A stretch of 5,396 nucleotides of DNA from Prasinococcaceae sp. CCMP 1430 (Eukaryota > Plantae > Prasinodermophyta), in contig RQSC01000029.1 of assembly GCA_013416795.1 (NCBI GenBank), positions 1-5,396 of the forward strand, given 5' to 3'. Below, in pieces: positions 177 through 4,556 of this stretch (positions are counted from its first letter, which is position 1; the number at the start of each line of letters is the position of its first letter). Position numbers and translations under genes: made by a program. A model generated the notes under the pieces. That model saw only the letters and a program-made list of their open reading frames with translations. It was not told the DNA's origin and searched no databases.

Positions 177-1300
177 ACGCACGCCTCAGGACGAGTCTCC
201 CGTGGGTGACGATGAGCTCAAGATGAATGCATCGAACAATAGGTGTGTGGTGAAGCATGCGCGCCCGCGTGTGCGGCAGACGCGAGCGATCAGGCGCATC
301 ATGCGTGTGGGGGTGCGAGCGACCGAGCGCGCGGCGCGGCGGCGCTGATGTGGACGAGTCCCCGCATCACGCCGGGGGGGGAGCGCAGGCCGGCCGGGGC
401 GCCCCGAGGCGCGCGCGCGCGCGTTTTCGCATGCGTTTCGCACATCATTTCGGCGCTGGACCTTGGCCATTTTTCGCCGCGCGGCGCGCGGCATGCGCTG
501 CCTGCATCTACAGTAGGTTGTGCGCGTTTCAACTCCCCACAGGTCTCCTGGACGGTCTCCACCAGCGAGAGGGGGCTAGCTACGCTGCTGCAACGCCCGC
601 TGCCGTACGCATCACATCGCATGCACGTACGTACGTGCCCGCATGCCTTCAATGGAGTCTCCCGTTAGTAATAATATCGAAATTTTAAATATCCATCATT
701 CAGCACGACTAGTGACTGCCCGAGCACCGCCGCGGCCGAAGCACTCACCCTGCCCTGCTGCCCCCCCCCCACACCCCACACCCCACGTCCGCACACGCGC
801 GCTCCGCTCCGCATTCGCCACAGCGCCCAGCCAGCCACTCTGCTCGCGCGCGGCCCCCGCCCTCCTGCGGGCTGCCCTCCCGCCCCCCGTCCATGCCGCC
901 GGCTGCATGCAGGCAGCCGTCGGCCGTCGTCTCGATTGCAAACCCTTTCTTTCATGCGAGACGACACTCCCAAAACAGCCTCACGCGCGCGCCCCTTCCA
1001 AAACCTCAACCTGCACGCGCGGCTCTGCGCGCAGCAGTGCGCGCGGCACGCGGCGCGCGTGGCGACGTGGGGGTTCGTGCGACTGTGTGTCCCTTCAACA
1101 ATTGAGTGCATTCCGCTCTCTCATCAATTGTAAACGGAGCAAATTTCGGCAAATTTTGGGTGCACCGAACGCACCAACGCACTATGGCGCATCCGCGGAA
1201 GCGCGCGCGCGGCAGCGGAAATTGGATGGGGGGATCGGGTGGCCAGCGGCGCGTGCGGAGAGGCGCGGGCGCCGCGCGCGGGGAGGGTGGTGCGGCGTAG

Positions 1301-2008
1301 GCTGCCCGCCGGCTGCGCGCGGGCCGGCCAGTACGCGCGGCCGCGCAGGCGCCGTGCGAGTGCGCGACGGAGGGGGGCGTCGCCGACGTGGGCGGGGTGG
1401 GCGTCACGGCCGCGGGGCTGCGCAAGCTGGAGCTCCTGGGTGCAGACGGCAACCGCAAGGTGCTGGGCGATGTCCTGGGGAGCTCCGACGGGCCCTCCCC
1501 GATCGTCTTCTTGCGCCACCTCGGATGACTGTTCTGCTGGTCGCTAGCGAATCGCTGGTCGGAGCCGCAGGTGCTGGAGCGCCTGCGCGCGCGCGACCCG
1601 AAGAGCTGCGGCCCGGTCTTCGTCAGCGTGGGCGACGACGAGAAGCTGCGCAAGTTTCTCGAGCTCAATCCGCTGGTGAACGCCGACAACGTGTTCGTCG
1701 ACGACTCGCCCGAGCGCGACGCGTACACAGGACAGGGCTTCGGGAAGATCGGAGACGTCAAGCCAGAGACGAGTGAGATGAGCAAGCCGGGCTTCACCCC
1801 TTCGCAGTGGTGGTCGTACCTGTCCAATGTCATGTCGCTCTCGCCCGTGCCCAAAGACATCAAGTTCGGCGAGGTCCCGCAGGGCGTCTTGCAGCTCGGT
1901 GGCACGTTTGTGATCGAAGGGGACGACGTCACGTACGCGTGGGCGGACCCGATTCCTGGCCAGCACCCGGAGCCGGAGGACGTGCTCACGGCCGCAGGCG
2001 TCCCGTAG
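1301..2008 (+). CDS. SELENOU: Selenoprotein of the AhpC/TSA-like thioredoxin-fold family (PRXL2 / AAED1 / selenoprotein U-like), Sec encoded by TGA 1526-1528; 5' end unresolved (upstream exon or start before 1301)
   Basis: One frame runs from 1301 to TAG 2006-2008, interrupted only by TGA 1526-1528. Translation: AARRLRAGRPVRAAAQAPCECATEGG...LELLGADGNRKVLGDVLGSSDGPSPIVFLRHLG-U-LFCWSLANRWSEPQVLERLRARDPKSCGPVFVSVGDDEKLRKFLELNP...QLGGTFVIEGDDVTYAWADPIPGQHPEPEDVLTAAGVP*. The FLRHxGCxxC-like active site and the QLGGTFV..H C-terminal signature are recognised as AhpC-TSA_2-type redoxin motifs. A SECIS lies downstream. The ORF track shows only the post-UGA part (1571..2008). The symbol is a family-level match. 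Confidence 0.88.
1526..1528 (+). other. In-frame UGA, predicted selenocysteine codon (U of UxxC)
   Basis: Codons CGC CAC CTC GGA TGA CTG TTC TGC read R H L G U L F C. The TGA occupies the first Cys position of a thioredoxin-fold CxxC, and coding-like sequence continues in frame on both sides. Confidence 0.9.
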
Positions 2009-2097
2009 TGAGTGAGCCAGCGCCATCATGGGCGTGCCAGGAGGTCCCACGGACGCCGCGCACGCCGCGCTTTCGTGCTCGGGGCGGAGGTGGGAGA

Positions 2098-2169
2098 GAA
2101 GGCATATGACGCGACGACGCCAACAAAAGGCCGCATCCACGGCCGTGGCCGTCGCTGACGACGACCTTC
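2098..2169 (+). promoter_or_regulatory. Eukaryotic SECIS element, type II (3' UTR)
   Basis: Helix I: GAAGG 2098-2102 / CCTTC 2165-2169. Core: ATGAC 2106-2110 / TGAC 2156-2159 (tandem G.A/A.G). Helix II: GCGACG 2111-2116 / CGTCGC 2150-2155, then GCCA 2119-2122 / TGGC 2146-2149. Unpaired AAAA 2125-2128. Apical mini-stem GGCCG 2129-2133 / CGGCC 2140-2144 closing loop CATCCA. It starts about 90 nt after the stop codon. Confidence 0.9.
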
Positions 2170-2243
2170 CGACCATCCCCGTGCTCCAGCACAGGAAGAG
2201 CGCAGGAGGCAGCGCGCGGAGGCGACCCTCGGCACGCGGAATG

Positions 2244-2248
2244 TGTAA
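2244..2248 (+). terminator. Candidate polyadenylation signal TGTAA for the selenoprotein mRNA
   Basis: TGTAA sits in the AT-richer patch 2240-2268, 75 nt downstream of the SECIS. UGUAA is the known poly(A) signal of many chlorophytes. A 5-mer can occur by chance. Confidence 0.5.
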
Positions 2249-2303
2249 GATACAGTGTTTGGTATTACGTGCGCAGCCGCGTTCTGCGCGGCGCACACGG
2301 CGC

Positions 2304-4556
2304 TCACGCCCTGCGCTGGCACACGTGCTCGGGCATCGCGATCTGCGCATCAAGAGCGGCGTTGGGCAGAGCGACAGAAAGCGTCAGTGCGTGCGGCAAG
2401 CGACGGCGCTGCGCGCGTTCGGCAGCTGCCTCGCGAGATTGGGGGACACACGCTGCGCATGAACGGACCTTGTCACCAGGAAAAATCTCTCCGCGGATGC
2501 CACCGCTCTCGCGCAGCCTGCGGATAGCAGCGCCAACGTCCGTCCCAGGCGCGCAGTGCGCCGACAGGATGCCCCAGAGACTATCGCCGTCCTTGACGGT
2601 CACCACCGGTGGGCTCGTCTCCGTCGCTGCTGTTGCGCTCGCTGAGCTCTCGCTAGGCGGGGTTTGCTCCGCAAGCCCCGCGTTCGAGGGGCTGCTACCA
2701 TCCTGCTTCGATTCCGCGCTCGGGTGCTCACCAGGCTGTGCCGTACCAACGCTCTCGGGCGCACGCGGCGGCCGGGCCACTGCATGGTAGTCCATCAAGT
2801 CACCCTCGGCCTCCCCGGTGCCTTCTGGCTCGACGAAAGCCCGCCTGAAGGGGCCTTCGACGAATGACAGTGCAGTAATTGCCAGGCACGCGACCCACCT
2901 CAGGGAGTGCAGCGCCCGCTGCCTGCTGCTCATCAGCGCCCTCCGCGCCGCTCTGTCGGCCCGCTTAGACTCAGCGACGGTCATGCACGCGACGCGCAGT
3001 GCCGGGCCCGCGCTGCGCGCGGAGAGCAGCGCCACGGCCACGCCGCTGTCCCCTTCCACGCATCCTATTGGCAGCGCCGCGGCGCGGTGGTCGTACACGT
3101 CGTAGTAGGACTCCAGCGCCACGCGGATGCTGCCCCCGGACGCGAGCGTCCTGGAGAGCGAGCTTTCAGCAAAGAGCTCTTTGCTGTCGAAGCTCACCGG
3201 CGACATCATGCTTCGAGCAGCAGTGGCGGCCGCGTCGGCCGCGTCTGCAGCGGCCAGTGCGGTGGCGCGCGCTTTGGCCACGCTCGCCAAGCCGGTGACG
3301 GCCACGCGCGCGCTCGCCGTTTCAGAGGCGCTGCTGGGCTTCTCGTCGCTGCCCCCGGTGCTCGCCGCAGCGCTCTCGATATCAGCACCGTCACCGGCGG
3401 CAACAGTCTCGGTGGTGTCGGCACCGTTCACGCTCGCCGCCTCCTCGGCCGCAGCCAACGCGTCCGCCGCCTTCCGCGCAGCCTCCGCGAGCCGCTCCGC
3501 CTCGGACCTCTTTTGCGAAATGCGCTCCTCGGCTGCCGCCGTCGCCGAGGGCCCCCCTGCGAACGCGCTGACTTCGACCGCCATGTACCACTGCAGGACG
3601 TACCCCTTGGCCGCGACCTTGTCCCCGCGCACGTCGTACGACCCGTCCGCTGACGGCGGCCGATAGGTTTCACTGAGGGAGAGCGCGCGTGCGCTCGCCG
3701 CCATGGAGGCGTCCGAGGTCTCGCAACGGTACCAGCACTCGAAAGGGAGGCCACAGCCGCCGCGTCGAATGGCGACGTCGATCACCAAGCAGTGCAGGTC
3801 GGCGCGCGGGCGCTCCGCCTGGCCGCCGCTGGCGCTGTACCTCCCGAACGCGCCGCCCCGCAGCGTGACGGCCTCCCCTGGCAGGTGGTCCACGGTGACC
3901 GCCTCGACCGCCTCGCAGAGGGCATCGCGCACAGCGACCTCGGCGGCGCTCGGCGGCGCGAGCTTCGTGACGGGCACCCACTGCGCGCACTTGTACGCGC
4001 AGCCGGCGTAGTGGAGCTTCACCAGCCAGCCTCCCGGAGCGTCGGCGTGCGCCGCGACGGCGCTCACCGACGCGAGCGTCGGCACGTCCTCATACTCGTG
4101 GTCTGACACCAGCACGTGCGCGCCTGGCTCGACCGGGCAGCGGCCGCCGAAGGCTGCCTCGTCGGCGTACGGGTGGTCCCTTTGCGCGTCGAAGGTGCCC
4201 TCGTCGGCGTCTTTCGCCGGCCCCGCGGCCAGCGCGACGAGGTTGGACCACGCGACCAGGAACTCGGGGCGCACCTCGGCTGGGGCCCCGCCGGCTGCGC
4301 CCGGGGCGCCGGCGCCCCCGGCAACGCGCGGGCGGTCAGACACTCGGCGCGGCAGCGCGCGCGCGGGGAAGGAGGGGGGGGGGGGTGAGGGAGGAGGCGC
4401 CGCGTGGCGCGGAGCGCAGCGGCCCCGACCGAGAGCCGCCAACCCCCCTTCACATCCCCCCACGCACCGCCACCACCGCCCCCGCCCCCGCGCCCGCCGG
4501 CGCGGACGCGGGGCGTTCGCCCGTCACCGGCGCCGGGGAACCGATCGATGAGTACT
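2304..4556 (-). CDS. Spliced gene for a multidomain protein: Tudor-knot/chromo-barrel-like segment, coiled coil, hydrophobic segment, C-terminal LysM. Proposed exons 4556(?)-4468, 4294-2469, 2342-2304; start codon not located
   Basis: A long frame (ORF 2304..4463) gives protein-like sequence. LysM motif VTVKDGDSLWGIL...IFPGDK|IAMP (2606-2331 after removing the intron). Tudor-knot-like motif GAHVLV...WLVKLHYAGCAYKCAQWVPVTKL (4133-3960). The track's GTG start at 4463 lies inside a predicted intron. Splicing 4467-4295 joins the Gly-rich frame VLIDRFPGAGDGRTPRVRAGGRGGGGGGG to AGGAPAEVRPEF with matching phase 1. That upstream frame has no ATG back to a stop at 4714-4712, so a further upstream exon is needed. 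Confidence 0.8.
2343..2468 (-). other. Spliceosomal intron (126 nt, phase 0, in-frame and stop-free) inside the LysM domain
   Basis: AAG|GTCCGT donor at 2468, CACTGAC branch motif (branch A 2384), GCGCAG| acceptor at 2343. Removal restores the LysM ending IFPGDK-IAMP. Confidence 0.85.
4295..4467 (-). other. Spliceosomal intron (173 nt, phase 1)
   Basis: GTGCGT donor at 4467, internal G- and C-runs, TCTGAC branch motif (branch A 4336), GCGCAG| acceptor at 4295. Branch-to-acceptor spacing (41 nt) equals that of the other intron. Confidence 0.7.

What the first reader, a model, noticed from the sequence alone, without database searches (positions are those of the whole stretch)
1301..2169. Hidden selenoprotein: UGA-recoded UxxC redoxin with its own SECIS
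Seen in sequence: the only interruption of a 235-codon frame is a TGA at exactly the first Cys position of a thioredoxin-fold CxxC (FLRHLG-TGA-LFC). A complete type II SECIS lies about 580 nt downstream in the 3' UTR. The true stop is TAG, followed directly by a TGA. Established: in eukaryotes a 3' UTR SECIS with SBP2, eEFSec and tRNA-Sec recodes UGA to Sec. The PRXL2/SelU (AhpC-TSA_2) family has Sec members in fish and algae and Cys members in mammals and land plants. Inference: this is a real selenoenzyme that standard ORF callers truncate to the 145-aa fragment lacking its active site. It also implies the host has the full Sec machinery. Whether this subfamily member is already described cannot be judged without a search.
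Basis: partly seen in the sequence, partly recalled or inferred. Interest (0 to 1): 0.85.

Follow-up and report, generated by a model that had tools for sequence, protein, structure and literature searches.

The report
Mis-annotated Prx-like selenoprotein gene in Prasinoderma
This is a real selenocysteine-encoding gene for a peroxiredoxin-like redox protein in the green alga Prasinoderma coloniale; its family was described in Ostreococcus in 2007, so the news is a wrong gene model and about 150 missing bases that hide its start codon.

Summary
One frame is open from 1301 to 2005. Its only stop is TGA at 1526-1528, inside FLRHLG-TGA-LFCW. The true stop TAG (2006-2008) is followed by TGA. A type II SECIS (2092-2172; AUGA 2106-2109, GA 2157-2158) lies 578 nt after the UGA.

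- **Not an error:** the TGA stands in a polyadenylated transcript contig, three more RNA assemblies and eight wild metagenome contigs.
- **Homologues:** nine homologous loci from seven other algal lineages, including the Cymbomonas genome, carry TGA in the same column. Cys forms read FLRHLGCPYCW. Coding conservation runs across the TGA.
- **SECIS:** seven of these lineages have a SECIS of their own with compensatory helix changes.
- **Family:** Pfam AhpC-TSA_2. The nearest folds are PRXL2C/AAED1 and PRXL2B.

The family is already published as the "Prx-like protein" selenoprotein of Ostreococcus lucimarinus (Lobanov 2007). This is therefore a new member of a known kind.

Two things are new. The official model PRCOL_00001189 is a 145-aa artefact without the active site. 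The window has no in-frame ATG, because it lacks about 150 GC-rich bases at 1333 that carry the start codon and a transit-like peptide in a wild scaffold.

The scan also holds unchecked notes on other selenoprotein candidates in this genome. None concerns this gene on other DNA.

The parts
1298..1300 (+). In-frame TAG that closes the frame upstream; it lies in the 5' UTR
   Evidence: Translation. The same TAG is conserved in wild scaffold L022 at position 140, upstream of its ATG.
1332..1334 (+). Junction where the window lacks about 150 nt. L022 has 151 nt (its 175-325) where the window has the single A at 1333. The missing piece carries the in-frame ATGs and an Ala/Arg-rich transit-like peptide.
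   Evidence: One search gives the L022 alignment, with ATGs at L022 227 and 239. In one search, six of seven wild contigs diverge from the window exactly at 1334; the seventh starts at 1338. In one search, DNA contigs of run X16 (organism A) stop at 1332 and start at 1334 with 156 and 25 unlike letters. 156 + 25 - 30 (k-1) = 151.
1334..1525 (+). Coding sequence upstream of Sec: end of the presequence, a CEC motif (1355-1363), then the first strands of the thioredoxin fold up to FLRHLG
   Evidence: Conserved in homologues across the TGA. 100% identical to P0024. The only wild substitution here (1444) is synonymous.
1526..1537 (+). UxxC redox motif: TGA (Sec, 1526-1528), CTG, TTC, TGC
   Evidence: TGA is present in 4 RNA assemblies and 8 wild DNA contigs. 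It aligns with Cys in P0017, P0029, P0032, P0033 and others. In the model of P0033 this residue caps helix 66-76.
1529..2005 (+). C-terminal 159 codons, AhpC-TSA_2 domain
   Evidence: Pfam PF13911: 35.2 bits against a cut-off of 27, E = 1.8e-8. Homologues.
2006..2008 (+). True stop codon TAG, followed by TGA at 2009-2011
2092..2172 (+). Type II SECIS: helix I, AUGA 2106-2109, helix II, AA 2122-2123 in an A-rich internal loop, mini-stem GGCCG/CGGCC, GA 2157-2158
   Evidence: Identical in wild strains, while 7 other 3' UTR sites vary. Homologues carry equivalent elements.
2244..2267 (+). TGTAA (2244-2248) and the poly(A) addition site at about 2267
   Evidence: Transcript contig L001 matches window 1355-2267 at 100% and then runs into A's. 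RNA contigs of X1, X2 and X3 end at 2239-2267. That TGTAA is the green-algal poly(A) signal is my own knowledge.

Best explanation
The region is the single-exon nuclear gene (no intron between 1355 and 2267) for a selenocysteine-containing, peroxiredoxin-like thiol-disulfide oxidoreductase of Prasinoderma coloniale. The protein has a thioredoxin fold, belongs to Pfam AhpC-TSA_2 and is of the PRXL2C/AAED1 type.

The UGA at 1526-1528 is decoded as Sec. The type II SECIS in the 3' UTR (2092-2172) of the same polyadenylated mRNA directs this through the eukaryotic SBP2/eEFSec/tRNA-Sec route. Translation then ends at TAG 2006. Sec is the N-terminal, attacking residue of a UxxC motif at the start of helix alpha-1. 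The Cys three residues on resolves it through a selenenylsulfide.

The full protein is about 257 residues. An Ala/Arg-rich N-terminal presequence probably targets it to an organelle. Its ATG sits in about 150 GC-rich bases absent from this assembly at position 1333.

Shown here: the TGA is real and conserved; coding is conserved on both sides; the transcript contains the SECIS; the fold family is as stated. Inferred: Sec insertion itself, the catalytic chemistry and the targeting.
For: **The TGA is real**
- It is in the poly(A) transcript contig L001, which is 100% identical to window 1355-2267.
- It is in RNA contigs of X1, X2 and X3 with no difference at 1526.
- It is in 8 wild Tara DNA contigs.

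**The TGA is conserved**
- Homologues of 43-68% identity carry TGA in the same column: L002-L005, L006, L008, L011, L012, L013 and L014 and the Cymbomonas genome L010.
- Cys forms read FLRHLGCPYCW or FLRHLACPYCW.

**Selection**
- The only two wild CDS substitutions, 1444 and 1669, are synonymous. One lies on each side of the TGA.

**SECIS**
- Canonical features and fold z = -3.9.
- It is invariant while 7 other UTR sites vary.
- SECIS elements stand at matching places in 7 other lineages, with 2-4 base-pair types per helix II position.

**Family and fold**
- Pfam is matched above its cut-off.
- The model of Cys homologue P0033 has pLDDT 89.
- It matches PRXL2C, AAED1 chloroplastic, PRXL2B and PRXL2A, and the PDB structure of human PGFS.

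**Published counterpart and host**
- O. lucimarinus Prx-like protein has ...LAULFCWSYA....
- The host is reported rich in selenoproteins.

**Start codon**
- It is supplied by L022/P0024.
Against: - There is no direct evidence of selenium in the protein.
- Rfam's SECIS models gave no match, even at E <= 10.
- A covariance model built from this single SECIS found the homologues' elements only weakly (E = 0.03-1.4), with background hits of similar score.
- The window as given has no in-frame ATG.
- If the 150-nt gap is a true deletion in the sequenced strain and not an assembly fault, this copy would lack its normal start. The mRNA is nevertheless well represented in that organism's RNA assemblies.
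- RNA contigs do not reach 5' of 1355, so the transcript start is unseen.
- Sec machinery genes and tRNA-Sec were not checked here. That point rests on the literature.
Confidence: 0.9

Rival explanations
1. The UGA acts mainly as a stop. The gene yields a short N-terminal peptide of about 97 residues. The downstream domain is untranslated or made by re-initiation, as in the 145-aa models.
For: Gene callers and the official annotation produce 145-aa products. Sec insertion is never fully efficient, which is general knowledge.
Against: A product starting after the UGA lacks the redox motif and two core strands of the fold. The official model begins in another frame and needs an invented intron. 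The transcript is colinear with the genome over 1355-2267. TGA plus SECIS are conserved in seven further lineages.
Confidence: 0.04
2. This is a pseudogene or a sequencing or assembly error: a Cys codon (TGC/TGT) mutated or misread to TGA.
For: The same assembly has a fault or deletion only 190 nt upstream, at 1333.
Against: The TGA is in four RNA assemblies and eight wild DNA contigs. It stands at the same codon in distant species. Substitutions are synonymous only. A SECIS is present.
Confidence: 0.01
3. The UGA is read through, but by a near-cognate tRNA (Trp or Cys) and not by Sec. The 3' UTR hairpin would then be incidental.
For: One homologue, P0025, is recorded with W at this position. 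Rfam finds no SECIS.
Against: W in P0025 is most simply a TGA translated under another genetic code by the gene caller. This was not checked. SECIS-like elements with the AUGA/GA quartet recur after the stop in seven other lineages. The family has published Sec members.
Confidence: 0.03

Closest known systems
'Prx-like protein' selenoprotein of Ostreococcus lucimarinus (Lobanov et al. 2007, Genome Biol 8:R198, additional file 2)
   Same: Same architecture. An Ala/Arg-rich presequence is followed by a Cys-containing N-terminal stretch, then ...HLA-U-LFCWSYA..., then the blocks FLELNP, FVDDS, GFGK, PEGVLRLGGTFV and YAWADALPGAHP. Both are from picoplanktonic marine green algae.
   Different: It comes from a different phylum (Prasinodermophyta against Mamiellophyceae). 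Similarity was judged by reading the printed sequence, not by a computed alignment. I found no published description of the P. coloniale gene itself, and its official model is wrong.
PRXL2 family / selenoprotein U (PRXL2A, PRXL2B = prostamide/PGF synthase, PRXL2C = AAED1; Pfam PF13911)
   Same: Same Pfam family. Same fold, with the CxxC/UxxC at the start of helix alpha-1. These are the best structural matches, at TM 0.5-0.66. Sec/Cys interchange at the first position is known for SelU.
   Different: Only 17-23% identity. Lobanov 2007 lists SelU and Prx-like as separate selenoproteins in the same organism. This clade has an inserted helical segment and an N-terminal CxC motif. No enzymatic activity is known for it.
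Arabidopsis 'Thioredoxin-like protein AAED1, chloroplastic' (Q9ZUU2) and its land-plant relatives
   Same: A distant sequence relative: P0169 and P0173 read LLRHFGCxCCWELA, with E about 1e-4. Fold match E = 3e-10. It has an N-terminal transit peptide.
   Different: It is the Cys form, as land plants lack Sec. Identity is about 20-30%. The loop regions differ.
SelL / bacterial 'SelL-related redox protein' (NCBIfam NF040769, Prx-like2)
   Same: The only NCBIfam match to the window's C-terminal piece and to two homologues, E = 6e-6 to 1.5e-12. It is a redox motif on a Prx-like thioredoxin fold.
   Different: Scores of 26-48 bits fall far below the 120-bit cut-off. From my own knowledge, SelL has UxxU.

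Membership tests
Eukaryotic selenoprotein gene | In-frame UGA aligned with Cys (or Sec) in homologues | tested here: met
Eukaryotic selenoprotein gene | Protein-level conservation on both sides of the UGA | tested here: met
   Synonymous-only variation.
Eukaryotic selenoprotein gene | SECIS in the 3' UTR of the same mRNA | tested here: met
   Poly(A) transcript L001 spans the TGA and the SECIS. RNA contigs.
Eukaryotic selenoprotein gene | Host has tRNA-Sec, eEFSec, SBP2, SPS, PSTK and SecS | not testable with these tools
   Only the window is readable. PMC7455551 reports many selenoproteins in P. coloniale. Other unchecked scan notes list further candidates.
Eukaryotic selenoprotein gene | Selenium actually incorporated | not testable with these tools
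   Needs 75Se labelling or mass spectrometry.
Eukaryotic type II SECIS | AUGA...GA non-Watson-Crick quartet flanked by helix I and helix II | tested here: met
   AUGA 2106-2109, GA 2157-2158, helix I GAAGG/CCUUC, helix II 6+3(4) bp.
Eukaryotic type II SECIS | Unpaired AA 10-13 nt after the quartet, followed by an extra apical mini-stem | tested here: met
   AA at 2122-2123, 11 nt after the quartet. Mini-stem GGCCG/CGGCC.
Eukaryotic type II SECIS | Structure kept by compensatory changes in homologues | tested here: met
   An anchored pair table shows 2-4 pair types at each of the first ten helix II positions across 8 elements. This is a hand-anchored count, not a formal covariation test.
Eukaryotic type II SECIS | Match to the Rfam SECIS covariance models | tested here: not met
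   No SECIS family matched at E <= 10. From my own knowledge, the Rfam seeds are mostly animal.
Pfam AhpC-TSA_2 (PRXL2/SelU superfamily) | Score above Pfam's gathering threshold | tested here: met
   35.2 bits against 27 for window 1529-2005. P0025 scores 35.8; P0017 scores only 19.4.
Pfam AhpC-TSA_2 (PRXL2/SelU superfamily) | Thioredoxin fold with CxxC/UxxC at the N-terminus of helix alpha-1 | tested here: met
   Model of Cys homologue P0033 (47% identical to the window's C-terminal piece): strand 54-59, C65xxC68, helix 66-76. Fold matches. The window's own protein was not folded.
SelU / PRXL2A-C orthologue | Closer to SelU/PRXL2 sequences than to other subfamilies | tested here: inconclusive
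   Identity is 17-23% to all three PRXL2 types. Lobanov 2007 counts it apart from SelU. No tree was built.
Algal 'Prx-like protein' selenoprotein (Lobanov 2007) | U-LFCW motif and the shared sequence blocks along the whole length | tested here: met
   Compared by eye with the sequence printed in the supplement.

The most novel reading that the evidence does not exclude
The mostly-Sec algal clade (UxxC plus a conserved N-terminal CxC motif, behind an organellar presequence) could be a distinct, still uncharacterised plastid selenoenzyme. Its Cys-converted descendant would survive in land plants as chloroplast AAED1. That would make it a clean case of Sec-to-Cys replacement on the way to land and a handle on the unknown function of AAED1/PRXL2C.
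Probability: 0.3. Interest if true: 0.45.

Novelty: new member of a known kind. Interest (0 to 1): 0.3.

Why it matters
For selenium biology this is one more member of a selenoprotein family known in marine green algae since 2007. It fits the published statement that P. coloniale has a large selenoproteome.

The practical value is in annotation.
- The reference gene model PRCOL_00001189 starts in the wrong frame on the ATG that overlaps the Sec codon. It invents an intron and loses the active site.
- The Cymbomonas model CYMTET_49497 splices out the Sec codon and the UxxC motif with it.
- Most database entries for this family are 130-150-aa stumps.
- The assembly also lacks about 150 very GC-rich bases that carry the start codon. 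The neighbouring gene shows a similar break at its own 5' end.
- Ultra-GC 5' exons may therefore be a recurring weak point of this genome.

Tried and rejected
- **Rfam scan** of the whole window at E <= 10: no SECIS family, only a chance miRNA hit.
- **MAFFT alignments** of the SECIS elements misplaced the AUGA cores and could not be used for RNAalifold or pair counting. I used end-anchored pair tables instead.
- **Single-sequence covariance model**: it found the homologues' SECIS elements at the expected places but with weak E-values, among background hits.
- **Exact-pattern scans of metagenome contigs** for the 5' end: both found nothing. The second pattern lies inside L001, so that collection evidently does not hold that sample.
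- **ATG 1184 or 1226 plus a short intron over the TAG at 1298:** rejected. ATG 1184 is GTG in the wild scaffold, and that scaffold supplies a proper ATG inside the missing 151 nt.
- **Inversion in the window beyond 4322:** local alignments on both strands were only low-complexity noise.
- **Supplements** of Liang 2019 and Li 2020 did not yield a listing of this gene.
- **PDB sequence search** with P0017 gave nothing relevant.
- **Word-index search** with P0017 gave only three relatives. The exhaustive search was needed.

Full report
**1. What is in the sequence**

Reading frame 2 of the + strand is open from 1301 to 2005. An in-frame TAG stands just before it at 1298-1300. The only internal stop is TGA at 1526-1528, in the context ...PSPIVFLRHLG-TGA-LFCWSLANRW.... 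The frame ends at TAG 2006-2008, directly followed by TGA. Mechanical ORF calling splits it into a 46-aa piece (1388-1528) and a 145-aa piece (1571-2008). The 159 codons after the TGA match Pfam AhpC-TSA_2 (PF13911) at 35.2 bits against a gathering score of 27, E = 1.8e-8. The window is 60-80% G+C.

**2. The TGA is real and expressed**

- A 919-nt JGI contig (L001) is 100% identical to window 1355-2267 without gaps and then runs into A's. It is a polyadenylated transcript that holds both the TGA and the 3' hairpin, with no intron in between.
- Contigs of three further RNA runs cover 1398/1408 to 2239-2267 with no difference at 1526. Two runs are from the organism itself and one is a marine metatranscriptome.
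- Eight wild metagenome contigs, 97.8-99.7% identical over their blastn matches, also keep the TGA.
- Across 1334-2005 these contigs differ from the window at only two sites. Both are synonymous: 1444 GCA>GCG upstream of the TGA, and 1669 AAT>AAC downstream.

**3. Comparative evidence**

- The closest database relatives are almost all 130-150-aa stumps that begin just after this position.
- I fetched their DNA. In every case the frame continues upstream through a TGA in the same column: G-TGA-LFCW, G-TGA-PYCW or G-TGA-PFCW.
- This holds for L002-L005, L006, L008, L011, L012, L013 and L014. It also holds in the Cymbomonas tetramitiformis genome, L010.
- Upstream of the TGA there is clear similarity, for example LRKLELLGADGNRK against LRSLELLGADGNRR.
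- An exhaustive search found 157 cluster representatives at E <= 1e-3. The full-length ones carry Cys there: FLRHLGCPYCW or FLRHLACPYCW. A few are degenerate.
- Land-plant proteins with LLRHFGCxCCW are distant members.

**4. The SECIS**

- Window 2092-2172 folds into helix I (GAAGG/CCUUC), an internal loop with AUGA (2106-2109) facing GA (2157-2158), and helix II (6 bp, a 2-nt bulge, 3-4 bp).
- Above that come an A-rich internal loop, with AA starting 11 nt after the quartet, and a 5-bp apical mini-stem. This is the type II layout.
- The slightly wider stretch 2085-2180 has an MFE of -40.5 kcal/mol, z = -3.9.
- My own descriptor finds it and one other site in the window. It hits shuffles about 1.7 times per 10.8 kb, so the element alone is worth roughly p = 0.04.
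- Rfam does not recognise it.
- The weight comes from comparison. In seven other lineages an [A/G]UGA...GA stem-loop stands in the 3' UTR, 68-203 nt after the stop where that distance was measured.
- In four of these lineages unpaired A's begin 11-12 nt after the quartet. One (L014) has CC there instead.
- Anchored on the quartet, each of the first ten helix II positions shows 2-4 different standard pair types across the eight elements.
- Within the species the SECIS is invariant while seven other 3' UTR sites vary. That is a small sample, roughly p = 0.07 if the sites were independent.
- A TGTAA lies 19 nt before the poly(A) site.

**5. Organism and annotation**

The 145-aa cluster contains EukProt entry PRCOL_00001189-RA of Prasinoderma coloniale. 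That model reads MTVLLVASESL and then SCGPVFVS.... It starts at the ATG 1525-1527 that overlaps the TGA in another frame, then jumps into the right frame through an intron that the colinear transcript contradicts. The Cymbomonas model CYMTET_49497 likewise splices out the Sec codon and the UxxC motif, keeping only the start of that exon. The P. coloniale genome paper gives 69.8% GC and reports a high number of selenoproteins. I could not find this gene in its held supplements.

**6. The missing start codon**

- No ATG lies in frame between 1301 and the TGA.
- RNA assemblies and wild DNA assemblies all break at 1334-1408.
- One wild scaffold (L022, protein P0024) gets through. It matches window 1163-1332, then has 151 nt where the window has one A (1333), then matches from 1334 on.
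- Its flanking contig ends are about 88-100% G+C.
- The segment supplies in-frame ATGs (L022 227 and 239) and the peptide MAAAMARGGVVARAAARARAAGAAPARARRAAA, which joins ...RAAAQAPCEC. The full protein is then 257 residues.
- The window's ATG at 1184 is GTG in that scaffold.
- DNA contigs of run X16, labelled as the same organism, stop matching at 1332 with 156 further letters and start matching at 1334 after 25 other letters.
- With the 30-letter overlap of k = 31 contigs, that gives 156 + 25 - 30 = 151. This agrees only if the 156 letters lie on the 1332 side, which is the orientation that makes the two contigs adjacent.
- I therefore read the window as lacking 150 nt, most likely through an assembly fault in an ultra-GC stretch.
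- A true deletion in the sequenced strain is the alternative. It would leave this copy without its normal start.

**7. Fold and family**

- The window's protein cannot be submitted read through, so I folded Cys homologue P0033 (47% identical to the window's C-terminal piece) with a 36-row alignment. The result was pLDDT 89.4 and pTM 0.83.
- Cys65, the Sec position, sits between strand 54-59 and helix 66-76. This is the classical thioredoxin-fold active site.
- The best Swiss-Prot model matches are PRXL2C (E = 2.5e-11), Arabidopsis AAED1 chloroplastic, PRXL2B (prostamide/PGF synthase) and PRXL2A.
- The best PDB match is human PGFS, 9usa.
- NCBIfam gives only a sub-threshold match to 'SelL-related redox protein'.

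**8. Prior knowledge**

Lobanov et al. 2007 list a 'peroxiredoxin-like' selenoprotein in O. lucimarinus apart from SelU. Their additional file prints its sequence. It has an Ala/Arg presequence, a Cys-containing N-terminal stretch...HLAULFCWSYA..., and the same blocks along its length. The family is therefore described. The P. coloniale member is a further instance.

**9. Mechanism**

- Shown: a polyadenylated mRNA with a conserved in-frame UGA at the attacking position of a CxxC-type motif, and a SECIS 578 nt downstream.
- Inferred from established SECIS/SBP2/eEFSec biology: the UGA is decoded as Sec.
- Inferred from thioredoxin-fold chemistry: Sec attacks a disulfide or peroxide substrate and is resolved by Cys at +3 through a selenenylsulfide.
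- Inferred from composition and the chloroplast AAED1 relative: the presequence targets the protein to an organelle.
- The conserved CxC just after the presequence in the green-algal members (CEC, ECPC, DCGC, ECSC, CAVC) has no assigned role.

**10. Verdict**

The gene is a new member of a known kind. The useful additions are the wrong gene models and the 150-nt gap that hides the start codon.

Noticed in passing
window 4322-4330 (5' end of the minus-strand ORF 2304-4463): Four of the five wild contigs examined at this end stop matching the window at 4322. Three of them run on far enough to show an ATG about 37 nt further on that would start the minus-strand gene (MAQAAPATGAAP...). A fifth contig matches with gaps to 4332. 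The window's ORF has no ATG there. This may be a second GC-rich 5' exon where the assembly and wild DNA disagree.
   Followed up: partly
window 2304-4463, minus strand: A convergent 719-codon ORF ends 37 nt from the selenoprotein gene's poly(A) site. It has only faint Pfam hints (LysM, T2SSF) and an Ala-rich low-complexity middle.
   Followed up: no
window 1355-1363 and the matching places in L006, L008, L011, L013, L014: A CxC or CxxC motif (CEC, DCGC, ECPC, CAVC, ECSC) followed by EG..A.VNG is conserved just after the presequence in the green-algal Sec forms. It is absent from many Cys forms. Its function is unknown.
   Followed up: partly
L010:3954 (Cymbomonas tetramitiformis LGRX02033577.1): The annotated protein CYMTET_49497 (P0018) splices out the part of the exon with VVFLRHMG-TGA-PFCW and ends in out-of-frame sequence. 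The genome has the TGA and a SECIS at L010 5209-5282.
   Followed up: partly
L014:950-1011: This homologue's SECIS has CC instead of AA 12 nt after the quartet. From my own knowledge, this variant is known from vertebrate SelM and SelO.
   Followed up: no
P0025 (Logan contig, 274 aa): This full-length relative reads FLRHLG-W-FYCW. The W at the Sec position is probably a TGA translated under a code in which TGA is Trp.
   Followed up: no
P0002 (ENA contig, 157 aa): Its last 105 residues are 99% identical to the window's protein, but they are joined to an unrelated 52-residue N-terminus (MPEVDIQIRCQRCGEQ...). This is probably a chimeric metagenome contig.
   Followed up: no
window 592 and 634: DNA contigs of run X16 (same organism label) differ from the window by A>C at 592 and a 5-nt deletion at 634. 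These are further small disagreements with the assembly.
   Followed up: no
L002:~500-700 (Tara relative, 68% identical): This relative has an intron between ...LGDLLGSGE and GKPGVVIFLRHLG that P. coloniale lacks.
   Followed up: no
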